Shown: one piece after another, positions 7,013 through 24,604 of the stretch
Numbering within the stretch: position 1 is the stretch's first letter
Layout: every line of letters begins with the position of its first letter
NCBI GenBank assembly: GCA_025558095.1
Contig: JAIVFI010000006.1
Coordinates: forward strand, 1-64,000
Origin: Hyaloraphidium curvatum SAG 235-1
Lineage: Eukaryota; Fungi; Monoblepharomycota
DNA: 64,000 nucleotides
Reading direction: 5' to 3'
Notes under the pieces: generated by a model
The model's database searches: none
Told to the model about the DNA's origin: nothing
Seen by the model: the letters and a program-made list of their open reading frames with translations, nothing else
Translations under genes and position numbers: made by a program

Positions 7013-9452
7013 TCACAGCGCATCGAGGATCCGCTTCATCTCGTCCGCAACCTCCCCGAACCCCGGCCTCGCCGCCGCATCCATCGCCCAGCACCTCTGC
7101 ATCAGCGCCCACGTGGCGTCCGGGATCCCCCGCGGCCGCTCGGGCCGGAAGTCGGGGTCGCTCCGGATGCGCGGCTTGAACTCCTCGAAGTCGATGCCGT
7201 GCCCGGGGATGATCATGCCCTCGTCCAGGAGCTCCTGCATGAGCGGGGTCTTGCCCTCGGAGAGGAGCTCCCACATGGTCATGCCGAAGGCGTAGACGTC
7301 CGTCGCGGTGCCCGGTGTCGGCCTGGGCTTCCTGAAAGCTGCCGGACGTGGGTGAGCAAAAGGGAAACTGCCCGAAACACCGGGTACACTCACACTCGGG
7401 GGCCATGAACACCGGCGTCCCTCCACCCGAGATGGTCGAGCGAAGCGAGGCCGTGGTCCTGATCTTGGCCAGCCCGAAATCGGATATCTTCGCCACGCCG
7501 TTCTCGTCCACCAGCACGTTCTCGCCCTTGAGGTCGAGGTGCAGGATCGGCGTCGGCAGCGAGTGCAGGTGGTTCATCCCGAGCGCGACCTGGAACAGCA
7601 GGCGGTGCACCGCGCGGATCTCCCACGGCGTTGGCTTGAGCTTTCGGAGGTAGTCCTTGGCGGTGCCCGCCATGAGCAGCGTGACGAGGCACAGGGGCTT
7701 GCGGCACCATCCCATGAGCGGTAGAACTGCGCGATCGTACCTCGTCAGCTGTTGAAACCCCACAGGCCCGCGCCGGAAGGGCTCACCGTTGACGTGCGGA
7801 GGCAGTCTCCCCCAGACTTCCATCTCCTTGTCAAACTCCGCGATCACACCTCCGCCTTCGAGGTCCGCGGCATCGATCCCGTTGATCATCTTGAGCGCCA
7901 CCTTGGTGTGCTTCTGGTAGGTCCCTTCCATGACCATCCCAAAGCCGCCCCGACCGAGGAAGCCGCCCTGTTGCAGGTGCTTCGGGTCGATTTCGTAGCT
8001 GCTGGTTGCGCTGGGCCGCTCGACGGGAGGTGGGGGTGCGGGTGCAGGCGAAGGCGCGGGGGCGTCGGGGACGCGACCGAGGGGCGGGTTCGTGCTCGGC
8101 TCAAATGCGCTGTCCGCGCGCCCCGCGGCCCCGCCGACGGGAGCTGCGAGAGCTTGTGGCGGCACCTCCACCGGCCCGCCGTCCCTATCGTCGGCGTGCA
8201 ATCCCAGTTCCGCCAGCGCGCGTGCGAAAGCCGCGACCTCCGCCTCCTTCTTCAGGCGCTCCTCCTCCGCGCGCCTCCTCTCTTCCTCCGCGACCCTCGC
8301 GGCCTCGGCCTCCGCCTCCCGCAAGGCTCGGGCAACATCCACCCCAGTCTCGCCCGCCTTGTTCCTCCTCATCACGTCGACCCGATCGGCCCGGCGGAGC
8401 AGCGCCGAGACCACCTCGGCCCGCCTCGCCCGGCACGCGAGGATGAACCCCGTGTCGCCCTGCGCGTCGGCGGCGTCGGCGTCCACCCGCGGATCGCCGA
8501 GAAGGAGCTCGACGCAGGCGAGGTGGCCCGCGTCGCAGGCGAGCATGAACCCGGTACGGTCCTCGGGATCGCAGACGTTGGGGTCCAGGGAGGGATCTGC
8601 GAGGGCAGCGACGACCTTGGTGAGCTCGCCGTCGCGGCAGGCGGAAAAGAAAGCAACGCGAAGGGCAAGCAGGCTCCGCTCTTCCGCCTCGCGGCGCTGA
8701 CGCTCCCGTTCGGCCTCCTGCCGGCGGGCTTCATCCTCGCGCTGCACACGGGCGCGCTCGGCTGCCTCGGCCTCCTGCCGCTTCTTCAGCTGCTCCCTGC
8801 GGGCGGCGGGATTCCGCGCGGCCGTCTCGACCTCCGAACGCAGATTCTCTAGAACGTTGTTTCTGCTAAGGTCGAGTTTTGATAGCGTCGAGTTGTGGGC
8901 GAGCGCCTCCGCAAGCGCGTGGGCGCCCTCGACCCCGATGGAGTTGTTGTCCAGGTACAGGGTCGTCAGCGTTCTGTTGCCCTTCAGCGCCTCGGCGAGC
9001 GCGCGGGCGCCACCGTCCCCGATGGAGTTGGACCCCAGGGACAGTGTCGTCAGCGCCTCGTTGCCCTTCAGCGCCTCGGCGAGCGCGCGGGCGTCCCCGT
9101 CCGAGATGGAGTTGCTGTACAGGTACAGGGTCGTCAGCGTTCTGTTGCCCTTCAGCGCCTCGGCGAGCGCGCGGGCGCCCTCGACCCCGATGGAGTTGCT
9201 GCCCAGGTACAGGGTCGTCAGCGTTCTGTTGCCCTTCAGCGCCTCGGCGAGCGCGCGGGCGCCCCCTTCCCCGATGGAGTTGTTGTGCACGTCGAGGGTC
9301 GTCAGCGTCGAGTTGCCCTTCAGCGCCTCGGCCAGTGCCCGCGCCCCGCTGTCCCCGAGTGACTGCCCGTCGGCATTGAGCACCGTGTTCCCCGCGAGCT
9401 CTTTCCGCCAGTACGCCGCATCGTTCTTCGCGCGGCCGAACAGCTTCTTCAT
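7013..9452 (-). CDS. LRR-ankyrin-coiled-coil-TKL kinase, copy A (introns 7727-7786, 7339-7393)
   Basis: Starts MKKLFGRAK and has 28-aa RI/NLRC3-like LRRs (LAEALKGNxxLTTLxLxxNSIGxxGARA), a coiled coil and ~3 ankyrin repeats (GFMLACDAGHLACVELLL; GDTGFILAC). Kinase motifs are GRGGFG, HLDLKGEN, DFG and APE. No signal peptide or TM. Confidence 0.9.
7880..8449 (-). repeat. 570-bp inverted repeat, right arm (inside copy A; pairs with 4257-4826)
   Basis: Direct sequence comparison with 4257-4826. Confidence 0.9.
8860..9390 (-). repeat. 84-bp coding tandem repeat array (LRR units of copy A: 5 internal units plus degenerate first and last)
   Basis: The recurring + strand block CCCTTCAGCGCCTCGGCGAGCGCGCGGGCG...CCCGATGGAGTTG appears at 84-nt spacing. 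Confidence 0.92.
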
Positions 9453-9507
9453 TGCCGTACAGCGGCGACCCGCGGCGCTCCACGCGGCCCCGCGCGGGAG
9501 GAGACCC

Positions 9508-9526
9508 GACTGACTGACTGACTGAC
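9508..9526 (-). promoter_or_regulatory. (TCAG)n tract upstream of copy A; homologous to putative tandem 3' splice acceptors of a 5'-UTR intron
   Basis: GACTGACTGACTGACTGAC on the + strand. The same element precedes copies B, C and D. In copy A the CTAAC branch-like motif is altered to CTCGC. Confidence 0.45.
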
Positions 9527-10014
9527 GAGCGGGGCGAGGGATTTCCCGTCGCCGCGAGCACCCGCAACTGCCCCCCGCGGCAGACACGCTCCCGACGCGC
9601 CTGCCGATGCCGACACGCGGAGGGACGTGCCCTCATGGCGGAGCTCCCCCGCGGGCCGCTCCCACCGCAGCAGAAGTGCGCGATGCTCACCGTGACGGTC
9701 GCCGTGCGGATGTACGACCTGCGCCCCGAGTCCTTCGTCGCGCTCGGCGAACGCGAGTTCCGCGCCCTGCGAACCTCGCTCGCCGCCTTCCGGGGACTCA
9801 CCTTCAGGTCGCCCCCCACCGCGACCCGCACGTGGCGCCCGTATCTCCTTCGCGGACCCACCGGTCGCGTCGGGCTCGTGGAGCTGCGTCAGGTGTGACT
9901 AAGCTGATGACCCGAACACCGGGTAGCGAGGCGCCGGCAAGCAAAAGTTGATACGTCGAGGCCGATATGAGGACGAGGACATGCAGATGGACGACGATGT
10001 TCGTTCCCCGGACT

Positions 10015-10360
10015 TCAATTCATCAAGTTGCGCCTCCTGCCCAACGAATCGAGACTGTAGCCGTTCCTCCACCTGTGCCTTCTTCCATGTCCCAGCAGCT
10101 CCTCCCGCGCCCTCTTCCACGGAGGACGTCCGCGCCGCGCCCCACTCGCCTCACGCGACGTGGCTCAGCCCGACCCACCTGATCCGCGTCGGGTACCTGC
10201 CACGGACTTGCGTCAGCCCCGCGTACACCTCCTCCGGCAACGAGAAACCCACCTCCCGCACACGGCCAGGTACACGCTCCCCGGGAACCCGCGGATCGAA
10301 GTCCCGCAGTCGACCCCGTTGCGCCGGAACCCGAGCGTGCGCGCGTCCAGGTCGAGGTCG
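10015..10360 (-). pseudogene. Duplicated 3' end (SPRY tail and last exons) of the BTB-SPRY gene at 25363-27919
   Basis: Aligns with ~25363-25705: DLDLDARTLGFRRNGVDCGTSIRGFPGSVYLAV...GYSLDSLGRRRNLMN* versus GYSLDSLSSRRNLMD*. Homology stops abruptly at 10360. Confidence 0.8.
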
Positions 10361-11186
10361 GCACCAGAAGGTCGTGCTCCCGGAGCGTCTTCACGATGCG
10401 GATCCTCCAGTCCGTGCCGGAGCGCAGCTTGATGGGCAGGAACTTCTGATCTTCCAGAGTCTTGACAAACTGATCCCGGTCGGCGAGCGAGCCCTCCGTC
10501 GGGATGAGGTACAACCAGGGGTACCCGTTCGGCCCGAATCGCAGCTTGGCGACCCAGGTGAAGCGGGCGTCCGCGGCCATGCCAAGGCAGGTCTTCAGCA
10601 CCGGCCCCACGAGGCTCTGCGCCATGTGGAGGGACATGTTCTCAGGGCGCCTGCCGAGGTCCAGCGCCACCATGGGCGCATCGTGAAGGCGAGGTAGGTA
10701 CGGCGCCCCCGCGCCGAAGGCGGAGTCGGGGAGCTTCGCGGGAGCACCGCACTTCATGAGGTGCGATTCCTTGAGGAGGGACATGGCCGTCGCCGGTGCG
10801 GCGAAGGAGATGATGCGCGACGTCGGGTTGAGAGTTGCGGCGTAGGTGGGCTGCGCGGGGGGCAGCGTAGGGCCCGCGACCGGGCGGCGGTCGCCGGTGG
10901 CGGCGTTGGGGGCGGGAGCCCCGGCCTGCGCGGCGGCTGCGGCGGCTGCGCTGGCGGGTGCGACAGGCTGCGCGGTTGCAGCGGTCGGCACGGCCGCCTC
11001 AGCCTCGGTCGGCTGCGCGGCGAGGGGTCCCTGAGTGGGGGATCCGGCGGAGGGTTGGGGGACCTTCGCGGCTTCGGGCATCGCGACCCCGGATTCGATC
11101 GAGGTGACTTCGGTCTGCTTGACAGCGCTTGCTGACAGCGCTGCCGCCATGTCCGCCGTCCCGCCAGGGGGAGGGGGGTCGGACAT
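10361..11186 (-). CDS. Orphan ORF (Ala/Pro-rich N-terminus plus ~150-aa globular-looking region), joined out of frame to the SPRY fragment
   Basis: ATG at 11186 (MSDPPPPGG...) opens a stop-free frame with protein-like composition (PTYAATLNPTSRIISF...GYPWLYLIP). No recognised family. Confidence 0.4.
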
Positions 11187-11269
11187 GTTTCGTCTGAATA
11201 GGCTGTTGCAGGGACGTCCATCGACCCAGCCCCGAAGCGTGCCTCCCCACAGAGGATCCGCCACGCGCG

Positions 11270-12190
11270 ATGCCGACGGCGCAGAACGGCCCCGCCTCCC
11301 TCTTGTACGGGGTCCGCGAGCCCCCCCGCCGCACCCCCGCTCGGCGCGCTGCTCCGCCTCCCCGGCCTCGCGTGCTCCGTCGCGCTCTGGGACCCCGCGT
11401 TCCTCGCCCGCCTCACACAACCGGGGTTCCGCGTGGTGGCGATGGACAACCGCGGCGCCGGTTCGTCGGCGAGATGGCGCGGGGCTGCGCGGCGGTGCTC
11501 GACGCCGCCGGCGAACGGCGGGCCGCTGGCCTCGGGCACTCGATGGGGGGCATGGTGGCCATGCGGTTCGCGTGCGACTTCCCCGAACGCGTCTCTTCCC
11601 TCCTGGTGCTCGGCGCGGGGGCGGGTGCAAAGTACGCGAAGTCGCCGGGGGCCGCGCTGGCGGGGTACTTCCTCGCGCTGCAGGCGTGCTCGTGGCTGCA
11701 CCCCTGGGCATCCTGGGCCTCTTCCTCCGCGGGCGCATGGGTGCGCGACGCGGAGCGCGGGACGATCCAGAAGATGTTCGCGGCCATCTCGGTCTCCACC
11801 GCGAACCCCGGCGGGGCGGCTGCCAACGCCGGGGAGCTCTGGGCGAAGCACTGGGAGCGTGCGGGCGAAGAACCGGCGCTGAGTGAGGGGCAGGTGACGG
11901 CGACCTATGTGGACTTGCTCGAGGACGTGGGGAAGATAAGCTGCCCGACGGCGGTGGTGTGCGGGACGGAGGATTGCTTCCAGCCGAAGGAGGCGATCGA
12001 GGCCCTGCACGGGGCAATGAAGGGGTCGGAGCTCGTGTGGTTGGAAGGGTGGGTAGCCGCCGCTATCCCCGGTTCGAGGGCTTGCTCAGCTGATACAACT
12101 CGGATCCGAAGGTACAACCACTGGTACCCGCCCGATGTATGGGTGCAGATCGCGGAGATCGCGGCGCGAACTGCCGAGCGCGGCAAGTAA
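11270..12190 (+). pseudogene. Alpha/beta-hydrolase copy 2 with compensating -2 and -28 nt deletions near the 5' end
   Basis: Paralog of 5890-6829 with GHSMGG, GTEDC and YNHW intact. Two deletions (~11325 and ~11467) scramble about 45 codons but restore the frame. Confidence 0.7.
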
Positions 12191-12394
12191 AGTCCGCCAC
12201 GTGTATCATGGCCTGTAATGTATCGGTAGCTGTGCCCCGAAACAGAGTCGCGGACCCCTCTATACCATGCGCCAGAGGACGCGTTTCTCCCCGAAGGGGC
12301 CAAAAGAGCTATTCTTTGCGAGTATAGGAAGAGTCGACGGAGAACGCCGCGAACCGGCTTCCCCAGAAGGTACACGGCAACCCGCTCTCGAGAT

Positions 12395-14884
12395 TCACAG
12401 CGCATCGAGTATCCGCTTCATCTCGTCCGCCACCTCCCCGAACCCCGGCCTCGCCGCCGCATCCATCGCCCAGCACCGCTGCATCAGCGCCCACGTGGCG
12501 TCCGGGATCCCCCGCGGCCGCTCGGGCCGGAAACCGGGGTCGCTCCGGATCCGCGGCTTGAACTCCTCGAAGTCGATGCCGTGCCCGGGGATGATCATGC
12601 CCTCGTCCAGGAGCTCCTGCATGAGCGGGGTCTTGCCCTCGGAGAGGAGTTCCCACATCGTCATGCCGAAGGCGTAGACGTCCGTCGCGGTGCCCGGTGT
12701 CGGCCTGGGCTTCCTGAAAGCTGCCGGACGTGGGTGAGCAAAAGGGAAACTGCCCGAAACACCGGGTACACTCACACTCGGGGGCCATGAACACCGGCGT
12801 CCCTCCACCCGAGATGGTCGAGCGAAGCGAGGCCGTGGTCCTGATCTTGGCCAGCCCGAAATCGGATATCTTCGCCACGCCGTTCTCGTCCACCAGCACG
12901 TTCTCGCCCTTGAGGTCGAGGTGCAGGATCGGCGTCGGCAGCGAGTGCAGGTGGTTCATCCCGAGCGCGACCTGGAACAGCAGGCGGTGCACCGCGCGGA
13001 TCTCCCACGGCGTTGGCTTGAGCTTTCGGAGGTAGTCCTTGGCGGTGCCCGCCATGAGCAGCGTGACGAGGCACAGGGGCTTGCGGCACCATCCCATGAG
13101 CGGTAGAACTGCGCGATCGTACCTCGTCAGCTGTTGAAACCCCACAGGCCCGCGCCGGAAGGGCTCACCGTTGACGTGCGGAGGCAGTCTCCCCCAGACT
13201 TCCATCTCCTTGTCAAACTCCGCGATCACACCTCCGCCTTCGAGGTCCGCCGCATCGATCCCGTTGATCATCTTGAGCGCCACCTTGGTGTGCTTCTGGT
13301 AGGTCCCTTCCATGACCATCCCAAAGCCGCCCCGACCGAGGAAGCCGCCCTGTTGCAGGTGCTTTGGGTCGATTTCGTAGCTGCTCGTCGCGCTGGGCCG
13401 CTCGACGGGAGGCGCGGGCACGGGTGAAGGCGTGGGCGCGGGGGGTTCGGGGTCGCGATCGAGGGGCGGGTTCGTGCTGGGCTCGAACGCGCTGTCCGCA
13501 AGCCCCGGATCCCCGCCCGCGGCAATCTGGGGCTGCACCTCCACCGGCCCGCCTTCCCGATCGTCGACGTGCAGTCCCAGTTCCGCCAGGGCCCGCGCGA
13601 CGGCAGCGATCTCCGCTTCCCTCGCCCGGGCGGCGGCGGCGATCTCCGCCTCCCTCTTGACGCGCTCCTCCTCAATGCGCCTCCGTTCTGCCTCCGCAAC
13701 CCTCGCGGCCTCCGCCTCGGCCTCCCGCACCGCACGGGCCACATCGACCCCCGTCTCCCCCGCCTTGTTCCTCCTCGTGACATCCACGCGGTCGGCCCGC
13801 CGCAGTAGCGCCGAGACCACCTCGGACCGCTTTGCCTGGCACGCGAGGATGAACCCCGTGTCGCCCTGCGCGTCGGCGGCGTCGGCGTCGACCCGCGGAT
13901 CCCCGAGAAGCAGCTCGACGCATGAGAGGTGGCCGCCTGCGCAGGCGAGCATGAAAGCAGTGCGGTCTTCGGGATCGCGGAGGTTGGGGTCCAGGGAGGG
14001 GTCCGCGAGGGCGGCCGCGAGCTTGGGCGGGTCGCCGTCGCGGCATTCGGAGAGGAGCGAGGTGCGAAGGGCCTTCAGACGCTGCTCCTTCGCCTCGCGG
14101 CGTTGCTGCTCCCGTTCGGCCTCCTGCCGGCAGGCTTCCTCCTCCCGCTGCACGCGGGCGCGCTCGGCTGCCTCGGCCTCCTGCCGCTTCTTCAGCTGCT
14201 CCCTGCGGCCGGCGGGATTCTTTGCGGCGGTCTCGATCTCCGAACGCAGATTCTCTAGAACGTTGTTTCTGCTAAGGTCGAGTTTTGATAGCGTGGAGTT
14301 GTGGGCGAGCGCCTCCGCAAGCGCGTGGGCGCCCTCGTCCCCGATGGAGTTGTTCTGCAGCCAAAGGGACGTCAGCGCCGAGTTGCCCTTCAGCGCCTCG
14401 GCGAGCGCGCGGGCGCCCCCGTCCCCGATGGAGTTGCTGGGCAGGTCCAGCCTTGTAAGCGCCGTGTTCGCCTTTAGTGCCTCCGCGATTGCGCGGGCGC
14501 CCTCGACCCCGATGGAGTTGTTGTCCAGCCAGAGGGTCGTCAGCACCGAGTTGCCCTTCAGCGCCTCGGCAAGCGCGCGGGCGGCCCCTTCCCCGATGGA
14601 GTTCCTGTGCAGGTACAGGGTCGTCACCGCCGAGTTGCCCTTCAGCGCCTCGGCGAGCGCGCGGGCGCCCCCTTCCCCGATGAAGTTGTTGTCCAGGCTC
14701 AGGGTCGTCAGCGCCGAGTTGCCCTTCAGCGCCTCGGCCAGTGCCCGCGCCCCGCTGTCCCCGAGTGACTGCCTGTCGGCATCGAGCCGCGTCTTCCCGC
14801 GAGCTCTTTGCGCCAGTACGCCGCATCGTGCTTCGTCGGCTCGGCAGGGGGCTTCGCGCGACCGATGCCAAGCAGCTTCTTCAT
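12395..14884 (-). CDS. LRR-ankyrin-coiled-coil-TKL kinase, copy B (1-nt frameshift at ~14797: pseudogene or sequence error)
   Basis: Same architecture as copy A, and the kinase region including introns is near-identical to A. The frame from ATG 14884 (MKKLLGIGRAK...ELAG) is broken by GGG where the paralogs have GGGG. Confidence 0.8.
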
Positions 14885-14940
14885 CGCTGCGCAGTGGCGG
14901 CCCGCGGCGCTCCGCACGGCTCCGCGGGGGAGCGGCACTC

Positions 14941-15011
14941 CTGACTGACTGACTGACGAGCGGGGTTAGGGATTTCACATCGCCGAGCCATCGAAAGCAC
15001 GCCGTCCCTAC
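14941..15011 (-). promoter_or_regulatory. Putative 5'-UTR intron of copy B with four tandem TCAG acceptors
   Basis: The minus strand reads AG|GTAGGG...CCCTAAC CCCGCTCG TCAG TCAG TCAG TCAG. The distance to the first AG is 59 nt, matching the typical intron size in this window. Confidence 0.55.
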
Positions 15012-15379
15012 CTCGCCCTCCCCCGACGCGTCCCGCCGGGGCAGATACCCTCCCGACGCGCTTGCCGTCGCCAACAGTGTGGACGGACGAGCCCTCGTGG
15101 CGGAGCTCACTCCCTCTCGAGCGTCTGCAACGCGCCCTGCGGGTGCCGCGTTCCCGCGCCGTGTCCCGCCTGATCGATGCGGGCCTCGCGCGGCGCGTAC
15201 GAGCTGCTCCTGCAGGTACTGATGAGGGACTTCGACCTCCGCGCGGGCGTCCGACACGACAAGACTTGGGAGCGCCCGGCGCCGGTTGCAGTTCGCGGGT
15301 GGTCCGGCGGGGGTCGGCAAGCTCTCCCCGGTGAAGAAGCTCCGCCTGTCGGGCTCCTTTCCCGTCGAGCGGGACCCCT

Positions 15380-16181
15380 GGCGATTCTCCCGCGGCGGAC
15401 ACGCTCTCCGACATCCGCAACCGCGCCGTCTCCCTCGTCCGTGACTACGGCATCGAGCACGCCATCCTCGGTCTGGAATGCCTGTCGCGCCTTCTCGGCG
15501 CGGAGGCCCGCCGCTTCCGCCCCGCGAGGGTGGTCGACCGCCCGCGGCACCACGACACCGCCATCCGGAAGCTCCTCTCGTCGGGGAGTTTCGGGTGCAC
15601 GGAGCCGTCGGCGATGTTCTCGGACTGCCTGGACTGCCGCCTCGGCCGCGGGACGCGCGCGGGGGATGGAGACGAGCTGGCTCCGCGGGGACGAGCTGCG
15701 CAGGATCGCCGGCTAGACGAGGGAGATCAACAGTGACCGTGCTGCGGGATGCGGAGGATTGGGGACGGGAGATGGGTTTCTCGAGGGTGTTTGTGGTCGA
15801 GGAGATCCGGAACGGATGTTGTCTGCAGCTGGGGTCGAGAAGCCACCGGCCCACGCGTCCGCCACGCCATCCGCCATCGGGTCGGGCCCCACCGTCCGAC
15901 CAGCGGTCCAGCGACCACCCCAAGAAGGACGGATTCGCGCGGTGCTCGAGGTGCAAGCGGGATCATTACTGCTCAAAGCAGTGCCAAGTGGCTGCGTGGC
16001 CGAAGCACAAGGTGGTTTCCCCGGCGATGGCGGCGCTGAACCCGGCGACGTAAATCGGTGCGGCACGAGGCGGCCATCTTTTGCGCGCCTTCTGACAGTG
16101 CTCCCGCGGCAGATCCCCCATCACACCGTGGAAAGGCCGGAGTACGCGTTGCGATGCCTGGAAAGGACGAGCGAAGGGTAG
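15380..16181 (+). pseudogene. Degenerate MYND-type zinc-finger gene, copy 1 (5' boundary uncertain)
   Basis: FARCSRCKRDHYCSKQCQVAAWPKHKVVS is the MYND C-terminal half with the last Cys replaced by Ser. Upstream frames are fragmented. Confidence 0.55.
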
Positions 16182-16557
16182 GTGCGAAGGGAAAGGTTGT
16201 TGGAGGCGTCGGTCGGACGCAATCTATGGTGGTGATGGGCTCCACAAGGCTCTGATGCCTCAATAGACAACGGTCTTTGGCAATGAGCTGCTTTTGTTTT
16301 CACGCGCCCGTGGCGTGGCGCTTGTCACGGGCGTGGGCGATGCCCGATCTGATCGAGTCAGCGGTCGAGTCGCGAACAGCCCGCGCGCCCACCGCAACTC
16401 GTTCTGCCTTGCACGTTCCCCCACGCTCCCCGGCCCAATCTCCACCTTCCAACTGCCCCGCGCGCCTCGTCCTCCTTTTCCCGTGGGCCCGCGCGCCGCC
16501 GCCCCGCGCCCCCCGCCGACCGCCCGTCCCGCCCCGCAGGAGCCCCCGCCGAACGAT

Positions 16558-17260
16558 ATGGCGTCCTTCTTCTCCGCGCTGCGCTCCCGCTTCCACGCTT
16601 GCTTCGACGGCGACCGCGACGCCCTCCCCGCCCGCCCCCGCGTCCCCGCCCCCGACGCCGCCGAGCTCCCCCCGCTCCCGTCGTTCCGCCGCTCGCTTAC
16701 GGTCCCCGTCGGCGACGCTCCCGACGACGTCCGACAGCTCTTCGAGGGCATGGGGCTGCCGGCAGATGCGACGGCCACCCTCCTCCTCACCATGTGCGTC
16801 CCGTTCTCCATCCCGCGGTTTGGCACCCGGATGCTGATCTCGATCCGATCCCCCGATCTCCCGCGTTTCAACCATCTCACAGGCTCTGCGATGCCGCGTG
16901 GACCGCCGGGACGATGGGCCGCGAGACGGTGCTCGTCGCTGGGAAGGGCCGGGCATTCGTGCAGGTGTGGCAGGCCGGTCCGCGGGACGCCAAGATCCTC
17001 GGGGTCGAGCTGATGGGGAAGTTCGGCCAGGCCAACATCACCGTCGAACGTGCGTTCGGTCCGCTCCCTGCGTCGTGCAGCCGCTTACCATGCACCGCCC
17101 TCGATCCGCAGTCGACGCCTCCCTCCTCGCCAAGTTTCCCGCCGCCCGCACGCACATGTTCGCCATCGCCGGGGTGGAGCTGGTGCCGGACAGGAGGGGC
17201 GACGTGGGGAAGATGAGGCGGGTGGTGGAGGAAGCGGGGTTGAAGATCGACGAGTGGTAG
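16558..17260 (+). CDS. Hypothetical protein (orphan family), copy 1, 3 exons
   Basis: MASFFSALRSRFHACFDG...LLLTM|LCDAAWTAG...NITVE|LDASLLAKF...EEAGLKIDEW*. Two GT-AG introns give a continuous frame, and a conserved duplicate starts at 21417. Confidence 0.65.
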
Positions 17261-17494
17261 ATCCGCCGCAGGTGGGCTCGGCTCTCGGATGCGGATGGAG
17301 GATATGGGAGGCGACGGAGAGGGGATGATTGATCAGCTAGAGGAGAACGGGTGATTTGTATTCCGTGTTGCGGCGCGGGTGCCGGCCAAGGTGTCTACAG
17401 ATACCTTTCGATCGACGCCTCCCCTTTTCCGCGCTCGGAGCGTTGCGGGTCCGGGCCTAGCCGGAATCGCGCTGGGTTCCAGGACGGCACATGG

Positions 17495-19485
17495 CTACCA
17501 CGCCTCCATTTCCGCGCAGACCTCGACGAACGTCGGCCTGTCCGCCGGGTTCTGCGCCCACATGCGCTCCATGAGGTTCCACATCCTGTCGTCGACGTCG
17601 TCGGGGCGCTCGGGCCGATCTCCTTGCTTGACAGCCTCCCGAAGCTGTCCAATTCCGTGAAGACCCAGTCGGACCAAGGCGGGTGCGAGCCACCCACCAA
17701 CAGCGCACCCAGCCCTTGAAACGGGTAGCCGCCCTCGTCGACGACCTCGTAGCACACCATGGCGAACGCGTACACGTCCACGGGCGGGCGGAGCTTGCCG
17801 CCGCGCCAGAGTTCCGGGGCCATGAACGGCGGGGTGCCGCTTGCGGAGCCCCCGGCATCGCGATCGCCGCTGGTGGTGCCCAGGGAGAGGTGCGTGCGGA
17901 CCTTGGCGAGGCCGAAGTCGGCGATCTTGGGGATGTCGTGGTCTGCAGTGGCCGGGGGTTAGATGCGCATGCACCCCCGGCCCGAGGGCCGCGCGAGCCC
18001 ACCGATCATGATGTTGGCGCACTTGAGGTCCCCGTGGAGCACCTTGTACGAGTGCAGGTACGCCATTCCCGCGGCCGTCCCACGGAGGTACCTGAGCCCG
18101 ACTGTCTGGTCCCAGCGCAGTTGTTCGAGCCGCGCACGCATGCTGCCGTCGGTCAGCTCCGAGATCAGAAGGGGCGGAGACTCGCAAAAGGCGAGGAGGG
18201 GGAGCACTGCGGCAAACGTTGAGCCGGGACGGCGAAAGTGCGAGATGAGAGGCCCACCATTCCGCTGGTTCAGCCCATCCCACACCGCAATCTCCTTCAG
18301 GAACATCTGGACCGTCTCGGGGGTCACGTCGCCCTTGACGGTCTTGACGGCCACACGCGTCGCGCCCCTGAGCACGCCACGGTAGACCGTGCCGAAGGAG
18401 CCCTGGCCGAGGATGGACGCTTTCTCGGTGGAGTAGGCGACCTCGTCCTTGGCGATGCGGAGCTTGGAGAGGAACGCCGAATGGTCCGATTTGGTGCTTC
18501 CGGGGGAGGCATGCGATCGGGACGGATCCGAAGGGAGCTTTGTCACCTGTGACGAGCTCCAGGAAGAAGCCGCCGGCGCGGCCGGGGCGCGCTTGGCCAT
18601 CTCCGCCGCTTCGGCCAGCCTGGGCTCCACCTCTTCCTCCCTCAGCCTCAGCTCCTGCAGACGACGTGCGACCTCGGCTTCCTGCTCCCGCACGCGGGCG
18701 GCCTCGTCCGTGAGCCGCTGCTGCCTTTTGACCTCCTGCTGCTGTCGCTGACGGAGGGCTTCTTCCTCGAGGCGATTGCGTTCCCGCAAGGCAGTCTGCC
18801 GCCGCCGCTCTTCCTCCTGCTGCTGCCGCGCGCGGGCGCGCTCGGCTGCCTCGGCGTCCTGCCGCTTCCGCATCTGCTGCCTGCGCCCGGCGGGATTCCT
18901 CGCGGCCGTCTCAATTTCCGAAAGCAGATTCTCGGGAAGGCCGTTCTCCCTGATGTCGAGGTCCGAGAGCGTCAAGTTGTGAACGAGCGCCTCCGCGAGC
19001 GCGCGGGCTCCCTCGACCCCGATTGAGTTGTGGTACAGGCCCAGGGTCGTGAGAGTTGTGTTTCCCCTCAGCGCCTCGGCAAGCACGCGGGCGCCCTCGA
19101 CCCCGACGGAGTTGTGATGTAGGTACAGGGTCGACAGAGCCGAATTCCCCTTCAGCGCCTCGGCGAGCACGCGGGCGCCCTCAACCCCGATGGAGTTGCT
19201 GCCCAGATTAAGGGTCGACAGAGCCGAATTCCCCTTCAGCACGTCGGCGAGCGCGCGGGCCCCCCCGTCCCCGATGGAGTTGCTGGCCAGGAACAGGGTC
19301 CTCAGCGCCGAGTTCCCCTTCAGCGCCTCTGCAAGCGCGCGGGCCCCGCTGTCCCCGAGTGATTGCTCGATAACAATGAGCTCCGTCTTCCCCGCGAGCT
19401 CTTTCCGCCAGTACGCCGCATCGTCCTTCGTCGGCTGGCGCGCACTCTCCTCCGTCGCGCGGCCGATGCCCAGAGGCTTCTTCAT
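17495..19485 (-). CDS. LRR-coiled-coil-TKL kinase, copy C (no ankyrin; 4 internal LRRs; 3 kinase introns)
   Basis: Starts MKKPLGIGR, followed by 28-aa LRRs and a Q/E/R coiled coil. Kinase motifs are GQGSFG, VAVK, HGDLKCAN, DFG, APE and DVYAF, ending AEMEAW*. Confidence 0.9.
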
Positions 19486-20286
19486 CGTGGCACGCCGGGG
19501 GGCCCGCGGCGCTCCGCAACGGCCCGCGGGGGAGTGGCACTGTCCTGACTGACTGGCGAGCGGGGTTAGGGATTTCCCCATCGCCGAGCCCTCAAAGCAC
19601 GCCGACCTCCCCGCTCCGCCGACGCGTCCCGCGGCAGACACCTTCCCGACGCACCTGCCGATGCCGACAGTGTGGGTGGACGGGCCCTCGCGGCGGACGT
19701 CCCCCTCGAGGTCGCGGCGCGGCCTCCGCGCTCCGGCCGACCGCCCGGCCCGCGCCGCCCTGTCCCGCCTAATGCGGGCCTCCCGCGGTGCCTACGCATG
19801 GCCGCTGCCCGCATTAATGCCGGAACTCGACCCCGCACGGCCATCGGGGACGAGGAAGCCCGGGAGCGCCCGGCGCGCGTGGCAGTTCGGGGCCGGCCCG
19901 GCGGGTGGCTTCAAGTTCTCGCCGGTGAAGAAGCTGCCTGTCTGGCGCCCTTCCCGTCGAAGGGGAATCCCACCTACTGCGCGAATCTCGAGCACCTCGA
20001 CTGCGTGGAGCTGCCACTTCGGCGTGCTGCTGGCCACCATCGAGCCCGCCGCGCGGAACCTGCGCTTCCGGGCCTTCCGCGACGCCGGCAACGACTTCAC
20101 CGCTGCCGATAAGGACGCAGCGGACCGCCGGTACGGTGCCCTCGACGTGGGCGGGCCCGCGCCCGGGAGCTGCAGCGCGCGGAAATCCGGACCGTCGGCC
20201 ACGCGAGATCGATCCACCTGCTCAACTTCATCTCGGACGGCGCCCAGCAGCCATGGGCTTCCTTTGAGACGGCCGCGACCCCGTTG

Positions 20287-21030
20287 ATTCCCCGCGGTGG
20301 ACACGCTCTCCGGCATCGGCAACCGGCCGTCTCCTTCATCGGGGACTACGCCATCGACCACCGCGTCCTCGGCCTGCAATGCCTTTTCGGCCTTCTGGGG
20401 CACACAGTCCGGCCGGTCCGCCCCCAGGAGGGCGCTCCTCGGCCGAGCAGGTTCCGCGAAGGACCCGGACGCCCGCCTGCAAGTGTGGCACTGCGATACC
20501 GCCATCCGGAAGCTCCTGTCGTCCGAACGGCTCGGGTACGCGGAGCTCTCGGCGATGTCCGCGGAATGCCTGGACTGCCGCCTCGGCCGCGGGACGCGCG
20601 CAGGGGATGGAGACGAGCTGGCTCCGCGGGGACGAGCTGCGCGGGATCGCCGGCGAGACGAGGGAGATCGTGACCGTTCTGCGGGATGCGGAGGATTGGG
20701 GACGGGAGATGGGTTTCTCGAGGGTGTTTGTGTTCGAGGAGATCCGGGACGGATGTTGTCTGCAGCTGGGATCGAGAAGCCACCGGCCCACGCGTCCCCC
20801 ACGCCATCCGCCATCGGGTCGGGCCCCACCGTCCGACCAGCGGTCCAGCGACCACACCAAGAAGGCCAGACTCCCGCGCTGTTCGAGGTGCAAGCGGGAA
20901 CACTACTGCTCAAAGCAGTGCCAAGCACAAGGTGGTTTGCCCGGCACTGGCGGCGCTGAACTCGGCGACGGACAGATCCCCCATCTTGCCGTGGAGTACG
21001 CGTCGCGATGGCTGGAAAGGACGAGTGAGG
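20287..21030 (+). pseudogene. Degenerate MYND-type zinc-finger gene, copy 2
   Basis: Paralog of 15380-16181. RCSRCKREHYCSKQCQ is followed by a ~17-nt deletion (removing most of VAAWPK) that frameshifts before HKVVCP. Confidence 0.55.
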
Positions 21031-21416
21031 GGCGGTGCGAAGGGAAAGGTTGTTGGAGGCGTCGGCCGAACGCGATCTTTGGCGGTGATAGGTGATAGTT
21101 CCACAAGGCTTCTGAGGTCACAATAGACAACGGACTTTGGCAACGAGCTGCTTTTGCTATCATGCGCCCGTGGCGCTTGTCACGGGCGTGGGCGATGGGA
21201 TCCCGATCTGATCGAGTCAGCGGTCGAGTCGCGAACAGCCCGCGCGCCCACCGCAACTCGTTCTGCCTTGCACGTTCCCCCACGCTCCCCGGCCCAGTCT
21301 CCACCTTCCAACTGCCCCGCGCGCCTCGTCCTCCTTTTCCCGTGGGCCCGCGCGCCGCCGCCCCGCGCCCCCCGCTGACCACCCGTCCCGCCCCGCAGGA
21401 GCCCCCGCCGAACGAT

Positions 21417-22138
21417 ATGGCGTCCTTCTTCTCCGCGCTGCGCTCCCGCTTCCACGCCTGCTTCGACGGCGACCACGACGCCCTCCCCGCCCGCCCCCGC
21501 GTCCCCGCCCCCGACGCCGCCGAGCTCCCGCCGCTCCCGTCGTTCCGCCGCGCGCTTACGGTCCCCGTCGGCGACGCTCCCAACTCCGTCCGCCACTTCT
21601 TCGGAGCCATGGGGCTGCCGGCAGATGCGACGGCCACCCTCCTCCTCACCATGGTGCATCCCGTTCTCCATCCCGCAGTTCTCCATCCCGCAGTTTGGCA
21701 CCCGGATGCTGATCTCGATCCGATCCCCCGATCTCCCTCGTTTCCACCATCTCACAGGGTCTGCGATGCCGCGTGGACCGCCGGGACGATGGGCAGCGAG
21801 ACGGCGCTCGTCGCTGGGAAGGGCCGGGCATTCGCGCAGGTTTGGCAAGCCGGACCGTGGGACGCCAAGATCCTCAGGGTCGAGCTGATGGGAAAGTTCG
21901 GCGAGGCCAACATCACCGTCGAACGTGCGTTCGGTCCGCTCCCTGCGTCGTGCCGCCGCTGACCATGCACCGCCCTCGATCCGCAGTCGACGCCTCCCTC
22001 CCCGCCAGCAAGTTCCCCGCCGTCCGCACGCACATGTTCGCCATCGCCGCGGTGGAGCTGGTGCCGGACAGGAGGGGCGACGTGGGGAAGATGAGGCGGG
22101 TGGTGGAGGAAGCGGGGGTGAAGATCGACGAGTGGTAG
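21417..22138 (+). CDS. Hypothetical protein (orphan family), copy 2; first splice site appears shifted by 1 nt, possibly defective
   Basis: Close paralog of 16558-17260. It has an extra G at the first donor and a 15-bp duplication (TTCTCCATCCCGCAG x2) in intron 1. The frame stays open if intron 1 is retained. Confidence 0.55.
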
Positions 22139-22313
22139 ATCCGCCCCAGGTGGGCGCGGCTCTCGGGTGCGGATGGAAGATAAGAAAGGCGACGGAGCGG
22201 GGATGATTGATCAGCTAGAGGAGAACGGGTCATTTGTATTCCGTATTGCGGCGCAGGTGCGTTGCGGGTCCGGGCCTAGTCGGAATCGCGCTTGGTTCCA
22301 GGACGGCACATCG

Positions 22314-24477
22314 CTACCACGCCTCCATTTCCGCGCAGACCTCGACAAAGGTCGGCCTGTCCGCCGGGTTCTGCGCCCACATGCGCTCCATGAGGTTCCA
22401 CATCCTGTCGTCGACGTCATCGGGGCGCTCGGGCCGATCTCCTTGCTTGACAGCCTCACGGAGCTGCCGGAATCGTCTGTCGAGACCAAATCGGAGCAAG
22501 GCAGGTGCGAGCCACCCACCAACAGCGCACCCAGCCCTTGAAACGGGTACCCACCCTCGTCGACGACCTCGTAGCACACCATGGCGAACGCGTACACGTC
22601 CACGGGCGGGCGGAGCTTGCCTCCGCGCCACAGTTCCGGGGCCATGAATGGGGGTGTGCCGCTTGCGGAGCCCCCGGCATCGCGATCGCCGCTGGTGGTG
22701 CCCAGGGAGAGGTGCGTGCGGACCTTGGCGAGGCCGAAGTCGGCGATCTTGGGGATGTCGTGGTCTGCAGTGGCCGGGGGTTAGATGCGCATGCACCCCC
22801 GGCCCGAGGGCCGCGCGAGCCCACCGATCATGATGTTGGCGCACTTGAGGTCCCCGTGGAGCACCTTGTACGAGTGCAGGTACGCCATCCCCGCGGCCGT
22901 CCCGCGGAGGTACCTGAGCCCGACCGCCTGGTCCCAGCGCAGTTGTTCGAGCCGCGAACGCATGCTGCCGTCGGTCAGTTCCGAGATCAGCAGGGGCGGG
23001 GACTCGCAAAAGGCTAGGAGGGGGAGCACTGCGGCAAACGTTGAGCCCAGGACAGTGAACGCGCGAGGAGCGAGGGCGGCCCACCGTTGCGCTGGTTCAA
23101 CCCGTCCCATACCGCGATCTCCTTGAGGAACATTTGCACCGTCTCCGGGGTTACGTCGCCCTTGATGGTCTTGACGGCCACCCGCGTCGCGCCCCTGAGC
23201 ACGCCGCGGTACACCGTGCCGAAGGAGCCCTCGCCGAGTATGGACGCTTTCTCGGTGGAGTAGGCGACCTCGTCCTTGGCGATGCGGAGCTTGGAGAGGA
23301 ACGCCGAATGGTCCGATTTGGTGCTTGCGGAGGAGGCATGCGATCGGGAGGGATCCGAAGGTAGCTTGGTCACCTGTGACGAGTTCCAGGAGGTAGCCGC
23401 CGGCGGGGCCGGACCGCGCTTGGCCATCTCCGCCGCCGCTGCCATCCTGCGCTCCACCTCTTCCTCCCTCAGCCTCAGCTCCCGCAGACGACGTGCGATC
23501 TCGGCCTCCTGCTCCCGCACGCCGGCGGCCTCGTCCGCGAGCCGCTGCTGCCTTTTGGCCTCCTCCCGCCTGCGTGCATCCTCGTCGAGCCGTTTGCGCT
23601 CCCGTTCGGCGGCCTCCCGCCGCCGCACCTCCTCCTCCTGCTGCTGCTGCTGCGCGCGGGCGCGCTCGGCTGCCTCGGCCGCCTGCTGCTTCTGCATATG
23701 CTCTCTCCGGCCGGCAGGATTGTTGACGATCGTCTCGATTTCCGAAAGCAGATTCTCCGGAACGCCGTTCCACTTGAGGTCGAGGTCCGAGAGCGTGAAG
23801 TTGTGGATAAGGGCTTCGGCGAGGGCGCGCGCGCCGTCAACTCCGATGGAGTTGTTGCGCAACCACAGGGTCCTCAGCGTTGAGTTGACCTTCAGCGCCT
23901 CGGCGAGCGCGCGGGCACCCTCGACCCCGATGGAGTTGTTCCCCAGGTGCAGGGTCGTCAGCGTCGAGTTGTCTTTCAGCGCCTCGGCCAGCGCGCGGGC
24001 GCCCTCGACCCCAATGGAGTTCCTTGGCAGGTCCAGCCTCGTAAGCGCCGAGTTCGTTTTCAGCGCCTGCGCAAGCGCGCGGGCGCCTTCGACACCGATG
24101 GAGTTGTCGTCCAGCCAAAGGGTCGCCAACGCCGTGTTCACTTTCAGCGCCTCCGCGAGCAGACGGGCCCCGCTGTCCCCCATGGAGCTCCTGTGCAGAA
24201 ACAGGGTCGTCAAGGTCAGGTTCCCCTTCAGTGCCTCGGCGAGCGCGCGGGTCTCCTTGTCGCTGGCTGACTGCCAGCCGGCATTGAACGTCGTCTTCCC
24301 CGCGAGCTCGTTGCGCCAGTATGCCGCGTCACCCTTCGTCGACTCGGGAGCGGCCTTCGGGGCCTGCGGCGCCGGGGCGGGCTGCACCGGGCGGGGAGCG
24401 GGGGCCGCGGCGGGTTGCTGCACCACTCGCGCATCCCGGTCCTCCTTCGTGCGGCCGATGCCAAGCAGCTTCTTCAT
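22314..24477 (-). CDS. LRR-coiled-coil-TKL kinase, copy D (no ankyrin; 5 internal LRRs)
   Basis: Starts MKKLLGIGRTK, followed by 28-aa LRRs and a poly-Q/E coiled coil. The kinase is near-identical to copy C (GEGSFG, HGDLKCAN). Confidence 0.9.
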
Positions 24478-24533
24478 CGCTGCGCAGTGGCGGCCCGCGG
24501 CGCTCCGCACGGCTCCGCGGGGGAGCGGCACTC

Positions 24534-24604
24534 CTGACTGACTGACTGACGAGCGGGGTTAGGGATTTCACATCGCCGAGCCATCGAAAGCACGCCGTCC
24601 CTAC
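24534..24604 (-). promoter_or_regulatory. Putative 5'-UTR intron of copy D with four tandem TCAG acceptors
   Basis: Near-identical to 14941-15011: GTAGGG donor, CCCTAAC branch and (TCAG)4. Confidence 0.55.

What the first reader, a model, noticed from the sequence alone, without database searches (positions are those of the whole stretch)
8860..24300. Hypervariable residues confined to the LxLxxN concave face of otherwise near-identical 84-bp LRR units
Seen: the scaffold (NSIGxxGARALAEALKGN) is almost invariant at DNA level, while the exposed x/xx positions differ in nearly every unit. A: D/HN, Y/GS, Y/YS, S/GS, Y/DN. B: S/DN, Y/HR, W/DN, D/PS, W/QN. C: F/AS, N/GS, Y/HH, G/YH. D: F/HR, W/DD, D/PR, H/GN, W/RN. 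They are enriched in aromatic, His and charged residues. Known: these positions form the ligand-binding beta-sheet in LRRs (plant NLRs, lamprey VLRs), and conserved repeats with a few hypervariable codons parallel Podospora HET-E/HNWD WD40 arrays. Inference: diversifying selection on a binding surface.
Basis: partly seen in the sequence, partly recalled or inferred. Interest (0 to 1): 0.8.

Follow-up and report, generated by a model that had tools for sequence, protein, structure and literature searches.

The report
Variable binding-face residues in fungal LRR-kinases
Four neighbouring genes of the early-diverging fungus Hyaloraphidium curvatum fuse a small NOD2/ribonuclease-inhibitor-type leucine-rich-repeat domain to a kinase, and three surface positions per repeat change far faster than the rest. 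This is the familiar signature of an evolving ligand-binding face, seen here in a fungal lineage where it had not been described.

Summary
In 19 in-register 28-aa units on the minus strand, positions 9, 11 and 12 of GNxxLTTLxLxxNSIGxxGARALAEALK are the most variable (30 of 84 inferred amino-acid changes, P=1e-9).

Two descriptors are overstated:
- The scaffold is 71-84% identical at DNA level, not near-identical.
- Positions 1, 3, 4, 17, 18 and 28 also vary.

The genes are cytoplasmic LRR / coiled-coil / (ankyrin) / non-RD TKL kinases of Hyaloraphidium curvatum. They belong to a dispersed family that the scan has already reported on another contig. An AlphaFold model (pLDDT 94) puts position 9 at the end of the concave beta-strand and 11-12 in the loop after it. 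The closest solved folds are the LRR domains of NOD2, ribonuclease inhibitor and NLRPs.

Selection is real but episodic:
- A versus B: omega at the three codons is 3.4 (LRT P=0.003), and nearly all change lies on A's lineage (16 versus 1 nucleotide changes, D as outgroup).
- B versus D: the same residues are conserved in collinear order (omega 0.13).
- C versus D: saturated, uninformative.

I found no donor cassettes and no sign of somatic diversification. Gene B carries a 1-nt frameshift. Verdict: a new member of a known kind, of moderate interest.

The parts
7013..9452 (-). Gene A: intact LRR / coiled coil / ankyrin / TKL kinase. Exons 9452-7787, 7726-7394 and 7338-7013.
   Evidence: ORF and Pfam domains LRR_6, Ank_2 and PK_Tyr_Ser-Thr. 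GT..AG introns of 60 and 55 nt, with each exon open in frame. The same joints appear in spliced contigs of run X1 on the identical B sequence.
8814..9401 (-). A LRR domain: N-cap unit 9318-9401; units A1 9234-9317, A2 9150-9233, A3 9066-9149, A4 8982-9065, A5 8898-8981; C-cap 8814-8897. In a unit lo..hi, codon 9 = hi-26..hi-24, codon 11 = hi-32..hi-30, codon 12 = hi-35..hi-33.
   Evidence: Register. AlphaFold2 pLDDT 94, with strands at unit positions 7-9 and a helix from position 17.
12395..14884 (-). Gene B: same architecture as A, but the conserved start (ATG at 14884) is out of frame with the LRR.
   Evidence: The G-run at 14796-14798 has 3 G where A, C and D have 4. The frame from the ATG stops after 52 codons. 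No indel was reported there in the laid contigs, but coverage of the exact place could not be confirmed.
14220..14807 (-). B LRR domain: N-cap 14724-14807, B1 14640-14723, B2 14556-14639, B3 14472-14555, B4 14388-14471, B5 14304-14387, C-cap 14220-14303.
17495..19485 (-). Gene C: LRR (4 units) / coiled coil / TKL kinase. It is the NCBI protein P0073 (608 aa) of Hyaloraphidium curvatum. LRR domain 18898-19401, with units C1 19234-19317 to C4 18982-19065.
   Evidence: The N-terminal 260 residues of P0073 are identical to the window translation. Sequence; tblastn mapping.
22314..24477 (-). Gene D: LRR (5 units) / coiled coil / TKL kinase, C-type kinase. LRR domain 23722-24309, with units D1 24142-24225 to D5 23806-23889.
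7023..7923 (-). Tract 97-100% identical in DNA to 12405-13305 of gene B (kinase exons and both introns). This indicates recent gene conversion or duplication.
   Evidence: Sliding identity of the A/B alignment.
14901..15001 (-). 5' leader of B, 100% identical to 24494-24594 upstream of D.

Best explanation
The variable positions are the ligand-contact residues of a small NOD2/ribonuclease-inhibitor-type LRR horseshoe. The horseshoe has an N-cap, 4-5 units and a C-cap, and forms the N-terminal sensor of cytoplasmic LRR / coiled-coil / (ankyrin) / non-RD TKL kinases in Hyaloraphidium curvatum.

The four genes are a tandem birth-and-death cluster with mosaic gene conversion. Within each 84-bp unit the helix-coding half and the Leu/Asn skeleton are kept by purifying selection, strong GC3 codon bias and some homogenisation. 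Codons 9, 11 and 12 carry the specificity, and codons 3, 4, 17 and 18 do so more weakly.

These residues are selected, not free. They are conserved between B and D, were rapidly replaced on the lineage of A after duplication (episodic positive selection, helped by copying of half-units within A), and differ again in C.

Inferred, not shown: ligand binding on this face regulates the kinase, probably through the coiled coil. All variation seen is germline variation between paralogues.
For: Organism and family:
- P0009 is 100% identical to G000:C6:874569-876380, and gene C is the NCBI protein P0073.
- The genome holds at least 55 RI-type LRR matches.

Domains:
- Pfam finds LRR_6, Ank and PK_Tyr_Ser-Thr.
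- The kinase of paralogue P0049 is closest to CTR1, TAK1 and Raf, and its LRR to ribonuclease inhibitor.
- The catalytic motifs HLD/HGD, DFG and APE are present.

Structure:
- pLDDT is 94 and the strands fall at unit positions 7-9.
- Foldseek matches NOD2 at 38% identity and rmsd 1.6 A, then RI and NLRP.

Selection:
- A/B omega is 0.15 for the core, 1.13 for semi-variable codons and 3.41 for the variable codons, LRT P=0.003.
- B/D omega at the variable codons is 0.13, P=8e-5.
- The relative-rate test with D as outgroup gives 16 A-unique against 1 B-unique nucleotide changes in the variable codons (P=0.0003), and 21 against 16 elsewhere.
- The collinear B/D match has a shuffle P of 0.001.
- The variable codons have GC1/GC2 of 0.44/0.42, against GC3 0.93 and non-coding GC 0.60-0.73, and use a restricted alphabet. 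This argues against neutral drift.

Mosaicism is shown. No donor for A's units exists elsewhere in the assembly; the best match is B at 84%.
Against: - The positive-selection signal rests on one paralogue pair of 140 codons. B may be a pseudogene.
- Synonymous divergence is a poor clock here. GC3 is about 0.9, and scaffold pS (0.15) is lower than in the adjoining ankyrin region (0.27-0.43), so homogenisation or codon selection inflates omega.
- Against the higher benchmark, omega at the variable codons is only about 1.5-2. The tree-based parsimony estimate is 1.6 (P=0.02).
- Half-unit copying inside A (the shared R-T...Y block in A2, A3 and A5) makes some changes non-independent.
- The B/D register was chosen partly by likeness of the variable residues themselves.
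- No ligand, no population data, no orthologues from other strains or species.
Confidence: 0.6

Rival explanations
1. There is no positive selection. Exposed x-positions are simply weakly constrained, as in every LRR protein. The scaffold looks unusually uniform because of strong codon bias, closeness to the family consensus and gene conversion, and the apparent omega above 1 is an artefact of depressed dS and saturation.
For: - Family-wide, positions 9, 11 and 12 are also the most variable (3.3-3.5 bits in 87 other units).
- A unit on another contig (C33:522591) is only 8% different in scaffold DNA from D4, so similarity does not need recent duplication.
- pS within D (0.45) looks saturated. 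C/D omega is 1.2, not significant.
Against: - The variable codons are far from mutational equilibrium: GC1/2 of 0.43 in a 68-70% GC genome, 35% Y/W/F/H, no aliphatic residues and no K, E or T.
- The residues are conserved between B and D while synonymous sites are near saturation (omega 0.13).
- Change is concentrated on one lineage, 16 against 1, which uniform relaxation does not predict.
Confidence: 0.25
2. The LRR domains bind conserved endogenous partners as scaffolding or regulatory modules, like the axonemal or RanGAP-type RI-like LRR proteins. The differences between paralogues reflect subfunctionalisation to different cellular partners, not recognition of non-self.
For: - Foldseek's top matches include axonemal LRR proteins as well as NLRs.
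- The B/D conservation fits a stable partner.
- There is no signal peptide or NTPase domain, and nothing links the genes to immunity directly.
Against: - The family is large, clustered and mosaic, lies near contig ends, and has a frameshifted member.
- The kinase is non-RD.
- The variable codons turned over rapidly in A.

These are traits typical of recognition families. All are circumstantial.
Confidence: 0.12
3. The diversity is generated by a programmed or somatic mechanism, either VLR-like cassette insertion or mitotic repeat shuffling within clonal cultures.
For: - Units are tandem and in register, and C has 4 units where D has 5.
- One contig of run X1 joins B (14360) to A (9391).
Against: - All significant unit matches in the 64-kb window lie inside the four complete arrays, with no orphan cassettes.
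- No near-identical donor exists elsewhere in the assembly.
- The X1 joint is out of unit register with only 32 letters on its short side, as expected of a k-mer assembly chimera.
- Genes A, C and D are complete germline genes.
Confidence: 0.03

Closest known systems
Plant resistance-gene LRRs (NLR and Cf/RLP clusters), with diversifying selection on solvent-exposed xxLxLxx residues and birth-and-death evolution with sequence exchange
   Same: - Variation is concentrated on the exposed residues of the beta-strand and following loop.
- The paralogues form a tandem cluster with mosaic conversion tracts and a decayed member.
- Ka/Ks exceeds 1 at those codons in a recent pair.
   Different: - The units are of the 28-aa RI type, not the 24-aa plant type.
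- There are only 4-5 units.
- There is no NB-ARC and no ectodomain. The output is a fused cytoplasmic TKL kinase.
- The organism is a fungus.
- The signal is episodic and seen in one pair only.
Animal NOD2/NLRC3 LRR domains and ribonuclease inhibitor
   Same: - They share the fold and the repeat type: NOD2 at 38% identity and rmsd 1.6 A over about 180 residues, with RI and NLRP among the matches.
- Sequence hits to NLRC3 reach E of 1e-100 and below.
   Different: - No NACHT domain is present.
- The array is much shorter.
- The kinase is fused in cis rather than recruited, as RIPK2 is by NOD2 (that comparison is from general knowledge).
Podospora HET-E/HNWD and other fungal NLRs with highly conserved WD/ANK/TPR repeats (Dyrka et al. 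2014, PMC4986451)
   Same: - A fungal, paralogous family.
- Its repeats are more alike than is usual for the family.
- A few surface positions carry the variation.
- Exchange occurs within and between genes.
   Different: - These are LRRs. That study found no LRR motifs in fungal NLRs.
- Internal identity is 64-76%, against the threshold of more than 85%.
- There is no NOD domain.
- No repeat-number polymorphism data exist.
Cytoplasmic LRR-kinase fusions of protists (oomycete, amoebozoan TKL/LRRK-like kinases)
   Same: The architecture is LRR plus a TKL-group kinase. The nearest named Atlas clusters carry Pkinase plus LRR_4, one of them oomycete.
   Different: - Those carry LRR_4-type repeats, and often ROC-COR.
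- Here the repeats are RI-type LRR_6, with a coiled coil and, in A and B, ankyrin repeats.
- Among the 120 listed hits, LRR_6-plus-kinase proteins all come from H. curvatum.
Lamprey variable lymphocyte receptors
   Same: An LRR concave face carries the diversity, and aromatic residues are enriched there.
   Different: VLRs are assembled somatically from flanking cassettes into an incomplete germline gene. Here the genes are complete and no cassettes exist.

Membership tests
RI-like leucine-rich repeat (Pfam LRR_6, PF13516) | A 28-29-residue unit with LxxLxLxxN followed by an alpha-helix, forming a beta/alpha horseshoe | tested here: met
   PF13516 E values of 3e-22 to 4e-12 in A-D. AlphaFold2 pLDDT 94 with alternating strand and helix at a 28-residue period. 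Foldseek matches NOD2, RI and NLRP.
NLR / STAND receptors | A central NACHT or NB-ARC NTPase domain | tested here: not met
   The Pfam scan of A-D shows only LRR, Ank and kinase families at E<=0.01.
TKL-group protein kinase, non-RD subtype | A kinase domain closest to TKL members; catalytic Asp, DFG and APE present; the residue before the catalytic Asp is not Arg | tested here: met
   PF07714. For paralogue P0049 the best solved relatives are CTR1, TAK1 and Raf. Motifs HLDLK in A/B and HGDLK in C, with DFG and APE. Kinase activity itself was not tested.
Fungal 'highly conserved repeat' class (Dyrka 2014) | Over 85% identity between repeats over at least 100 aa | tested here: not met
   Mean within-array protein identity is 0.76 (A), 0.64 (B), 0.70 (C) and 0.68 (D). 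It is 0.70-0.82 without the three variable positions.
Fungal 'highly conserved repeat' class (Dyrka 2014) | Concerted evolution or repeat shuffling within and between genes | tested here: inconclusive
   Nearest scaffold neighbours are a mix of within-gene pairs (A2-A3, B1-B2, C2-C3) and between-gene pairs (A1-B1, A5-B5, B4-D3). A2, A3 and A5 share a block. C has 4 units and D has 5.
Receptor LRRs under diversifying selection (plant R-gene type) | dN/dS above 1 at solvent-exposed x-positions and below 1 in the scaffold | tested here: inconclusive
   Met for A/B (omega 3.41 against 0.15, P=0.003). Not significant for C/D. Reversed for B/D (0.13). These are paralogues only; there are no alleles or orthologues.
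VLR-type somatically assembled LRR receptors | An incomplete germline gene flanked by donor LRR cassettes | tested here: not met
   An nhmmer scan of the window finds units only inside the four arrays. A genome search finds no closer copy than B, at 84%. A, C and D are complete genes.

The most novel reading that the evidence does not exclude
The cluster is part of an LRR-based intracellular recognition system of an early-diverging fungus. A three-residue-per-repeat code on the concave face sets ligand specificity. The same code (B and D) is wired to two different kinase/ankyrin outputs, and new codes (A, C) arise after duplication under positive selection. This would be a fungal counterpart of LRR immune receptors, which fungi are thought to lack.
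Probability: 0.25. Interest if true: 0.75.

Novelty: new member of a known kind. Interest (0 to 1): 0.45.

Why it matters
Surveys of fungal NOD-like receptors found WD, ANK and TPR repeats but no LRRs (PMC4986451). Here a Monoblepharomycota fungus has expanded NOD2-type LRR domains fused to non-RD kinases.

In one recent pair, the predicted contact residues evolve faster than synonymous sites. In another pair the same residues are conserved. Together this gives a small, explicit set of candidate specificity residues: 3 per unit, about 21 per protein. These can be swapped between paralogues to look for ligands and to ask whether LRR-based recognition exists in fungi.

As a pattern it is what LRR receptor families show elsewhere, so the advance is one of taxon and architecture, not of principle.

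Tried and rejected
- **Ancestral reconstruction.** I did not attempt it by other means. I used treekit's minimum-change counts, pairwise NG86 and my own two-sequence codon likelihood with fixed site classes.
- **Nearest-neighbour pairs.** Choosing pairs by scaffold distance gave omega 3.6. I discounted this as biased by how the pairs were chosen, and replaced it with positional pairs.
- **Public reads.** Only Logan contigs of three runs of the same organism were available. They show spliced kinase joints, but they cannot show polymorphism, strand or per-paralogue expression. No differences were listed inside the A or B arrays.
- **Odd joint.** The joint from 14360 to 9391 in X1 was judged an assembly chimera.
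- **Telomere repeats.** None at the contig start.
- **Orphan LRR cassettes or external donors.** None.
- **Literature.** No paper holds both Hyaloraphidium and leucine-rich repeat. The genome search returned mitochondrial papers only. The TKL/fungi search found nothing specific.
- **Spliced proteins.** Exons were translated one at a time, and the deposited proteins P0073, P0049 and P0009 served as full-length proxies.
- **Left unused.** The big representative search and complex prediction were not used, because no claim here rests on them.


Full report
**What is there**

Tandem Repeats Finder reports four 84-bp arrays at 8902-9358, 14308-14764, 18986-19344 and 23816-24251. All lie on the minus strand, inside long ORFs. 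Cut in register, each protein has an N-terminal cap unit, 5 (A, B, D) or 4 (C) canonical 28-residue units of the form GNxxLTTLxLxxNSIGxxGARALAEALK, and a C-terminal cap.

**Organism and genes**

The window is the first 64 kb of contig 6 of a 31.9-Mb, 55-contig assembly. A deposited protein of Hyaloraphidium curvatum (P0009) is 100% identical to another place on the same contig. Gene C is the deposited protein P0073. The organism is therefore this Monoblepharomycota fungus.

- Pfam finds LRR_6, ankyrin repeats (A and B only) and a Tyr/Ser-Thr-type kinase. It finds no NACHT or NB-ARC domain.
- For paralogue P0049, the solved kinases closest in sequence are CTR1, TAK1 and Raf, which places the kinase in the TKL group. 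Its LRR is closest to ribonuclease inhibitor.
- The catalytic loop reads HLD in A and B and HGD in C, a non-RD kinase. DFG and APE are present.
- Gene A is intact, with three exons and two GT..AG introns of 60 and 55 nt. The same joints occur in spliced contigs of public run X1 laid on the identical B sequence.
- Gene B has a one-base shorter G-run at 14796-14798. This puts its conserved start codon (14884) out of frame with the LRR, and that frame stops after 52 codons. B is either a young pseudogene or an assembly error.
Exons were read one at a time, and deposited proteins served as full-length proxies.

**Is the variability concentrated, and more than chance?**

Yes.

- Entropy over the 19 canonical units is 2.76, 2.77 and 2.04 bits at positions 9, 11 and 12. 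It is 1.74 at position 3, about 1.4 at positions 17 and 18, and at most 0.8 at most other positions.
- On a maximum-likelihood tree of the units, the fewest amino-acid changes are 10, 11 and 9 at these three positions, out of 84 in all. The binomial P is 1.2e-9.
- Between A and B, 47% of nucleotides differ in these codons, 28% in codons 1, 3, 4, 17, 18 and 28, and 7% in the other 19 codons.

- The scaffold is not almost invariant in DNA. Its p-distance between units is 0.05-0.27, and units within an array are 71-84% identical.
- The variation is not confined to the three positions.

The window's arrays are nevertheless clearly more uniform (64-76% protein identity) than the other arrays of the family in this genome (36-59%).

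**Where the positions sit**

An AlphaFold2 model of A's LRR domain has mean pLDDT 94. It shows a strand at unit positions 7-9 and a helix from position 17 in every unit.

- Position 9 is the last strand residue.
- Positions 11 and 12 lie in the loop between the strand and the conserved Asn13.
- Positions 17 and 18 open the helix on the same rim.

From general knowledge of LRR structure, strand positions that alternate with the core leucines face the concave side. In ribonuclease inhibitor complexes many contacts come from these strand-to-helix loops. I did not compute accessibilities, because the tool returns no coordinates. Foldseek's best matches are LRR domains of NOD2 (38% identity, rmsd 1.6 A), NLRX1, ribonuclease inhibitor, NLRP1/3/14 and axonemal LRR proteins.

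**Selection**

*A versus B.* Comparing A and B unit by unit, NG86 gives pN 0.52 at the three codons, against a pooled pS of 0.15 in the LRR. pS is 0.27 in the adjoining coiled-coil/ankyrin part, ranging from 0.16 to 0.43 by window. I also fitted a two-sequence codon likelihood model (F3x4, shared time and kappa, three fixed site classes).

| Comparison | omega core | omega semi-variable | omega variable | Test of variable class against omega=1 |
|---|---|---|---|---|
| A/B, positional | 0.15 | 1.13 | 3.41 | LRT 8.7, P=0.003 |
| C/D, positional | 0.06 | 0.22 | 1.2 | not significant; synonymous sites near saturation |
| B/D, collinear register | 0.06 | 0.34 | 0.13 | P=8e-5, below 1 |

*B versus D.* The variable triplets line up collinearly: YHR/FHR, WDN/WDD, DPS/DPR and WQN/WRN, with 8 identical residues. 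A shuffle gives P=0.001. The B4-D3 pairing is independently supported by the scaffold tree (91-95).

*Relative rates.* With D as outgroup, the variable codons show 16 A-unique against 1 B-unique nucleotide changes (P=0.0003). The rest of the units show 21 against 16.

The picture is therefore this. B and D keep an old code, A replaced it quickly after splitting from a B-like gene, and C carries a third code.

*The positions are not drifting freely.* Their first and second codon positions are 44% and 42% GC, in a genome with GC3 of 0.93 and non-coding GC of 0.60-0.73. Y/W/F/H make up 35% of residues there, against 5% downstream. None of L, I, V, M, C, T, K or E occurs. Aromatic residues are four-fold enriched relative to the same positions in the rest of the family (P=0.0008).

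**Caveats**

- Synonymous divergence is a weak yardstick here. Codon bias is extreme. Scaffold pS is lower than in the next domain. A unit on another contig differs by only 8% from D4 in scaffold DNA. Closeness to the family consensus therefore explains part of the DNA likeness.
- Against the higher benchmark, omega at the variable codons is about 1.5-2. The parsimony estimate on the tree is 1.6 (P=0.02).
- A2, A3 and A5 share an identical block over codons 3-10. Some of A's changes therefore spread by copying within the array and are not independent.
- The genes are mosaics. The kinase part of A and B is 97-100% identical including introns. The leader of B is identical to that of D. The LRRs are 71-90% identical.
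- All comparisons are between paralogues of one genome.

**Mechanisms excluded or untested**

- A profile scan of the window finds units only inside the four arrays.
- A's array has no closer relative in the assembly than B, at 84%. There are thus no donor cassettes and no external donor for A's new residues.
- The public runs are kept as contigs and cannot show polymorphism or somatic variants.
- A joint between 14360 and 9391 in one run is out of unit register with a 32-letter side, and is best read as an assembly chimera.

**What it is like**

The pattern is the one long known from plant resistance-gene LRRs: exposed x-positions, tandem clusters, exchange between copies and decay. It is carried here on an NOD2/RI-type repeat fused in cis to a TKL kinase. 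LRR-kinase fusions as such are widespread.

The genes are not NLRs, because they have no NTPase domain. They do not meet the 85% internal-identity criterion of the fungal highly-conserved-repeat class, and they are not VLR-like.

What is new is the taxon and the repeat type. The survey of fungal NLRs found no LRR motifs (PMC4986451), and no paper in the library links Hyaloraphidium with LRRs. The scan has already reported this LRR-kinase family on another contig of the same genome (s1-699354). The present report adds the site-level analysis.

**Verdict**

- Observation: partly confirmed.
- Interpretation: partly supported. Selection on a binding face is episodic rather than continuous, and germline rather than somatic.
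- Class: a new member of a known kind.
- Interest: moderate.

Noticed in passing
window 14796-14798 (gene B): The G-run has 3 G where A, C and D have 4. B's conserved start codon at 14884 is therefore out of frame with its LRR-kinase body and stops after 52 codons. B is a young pseudogene or an assembly error.
   Followed up: partly
window 7023-7923 and 12405-13305: The kinase exons and both introns of A and B are 97-100% identical in DNA, while their LRR and linker parts are 72-93% identical. This points to a recent conversion tract.
   Followed up: partly
window 14901-15001 and 24494-24594: The 5' leaders of B and D are 100% identical. All four genes share a leader with (TCAG)3-4 about 60-70 nt upstream of the ATG.
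   Followed up: no
window 4310-5693 (+ strand): Kinase exons similar to P0009 (45-78% identity) lie head-to-head upstream of gene A, with no LRR array of their own. This may be a kinase-only relative or a remnant.
   Followed up: no
G000:C6:874569-877155 (P0009) and the C33:515-518 kb region (P0014): Some family members carry two complete small LRR modules in tandem before the kinase, each with a cap, 2 units and a cap.
   Followed up: no
G000 contigs C7:27916-29277 / C54:6021-7382 and C1:548372-549181 / C52:14768-15577: Pairs of kinase matches have identical scores on a large and a small contig. They may be haplotigs or very recent duplicates, and could give allelic comparisons.
   Followed up: no
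window 9391 / 14360, run X1: A contig of a public run joins B's last unit to A's N-cap, out of unit register. It is most likely a k-mer assembly chimera between repeats.
   Followed up: partly
one search hit list: The strongest non-self hits of the LRR domain are long RI-like LRR proteins of Mortierellomycotina (Mortierella, Linnemannia, Podila), ahead of vertebrate NLRC3. RI-type LRR expansions may be common in early-diverging fungi.
   Followed up: no
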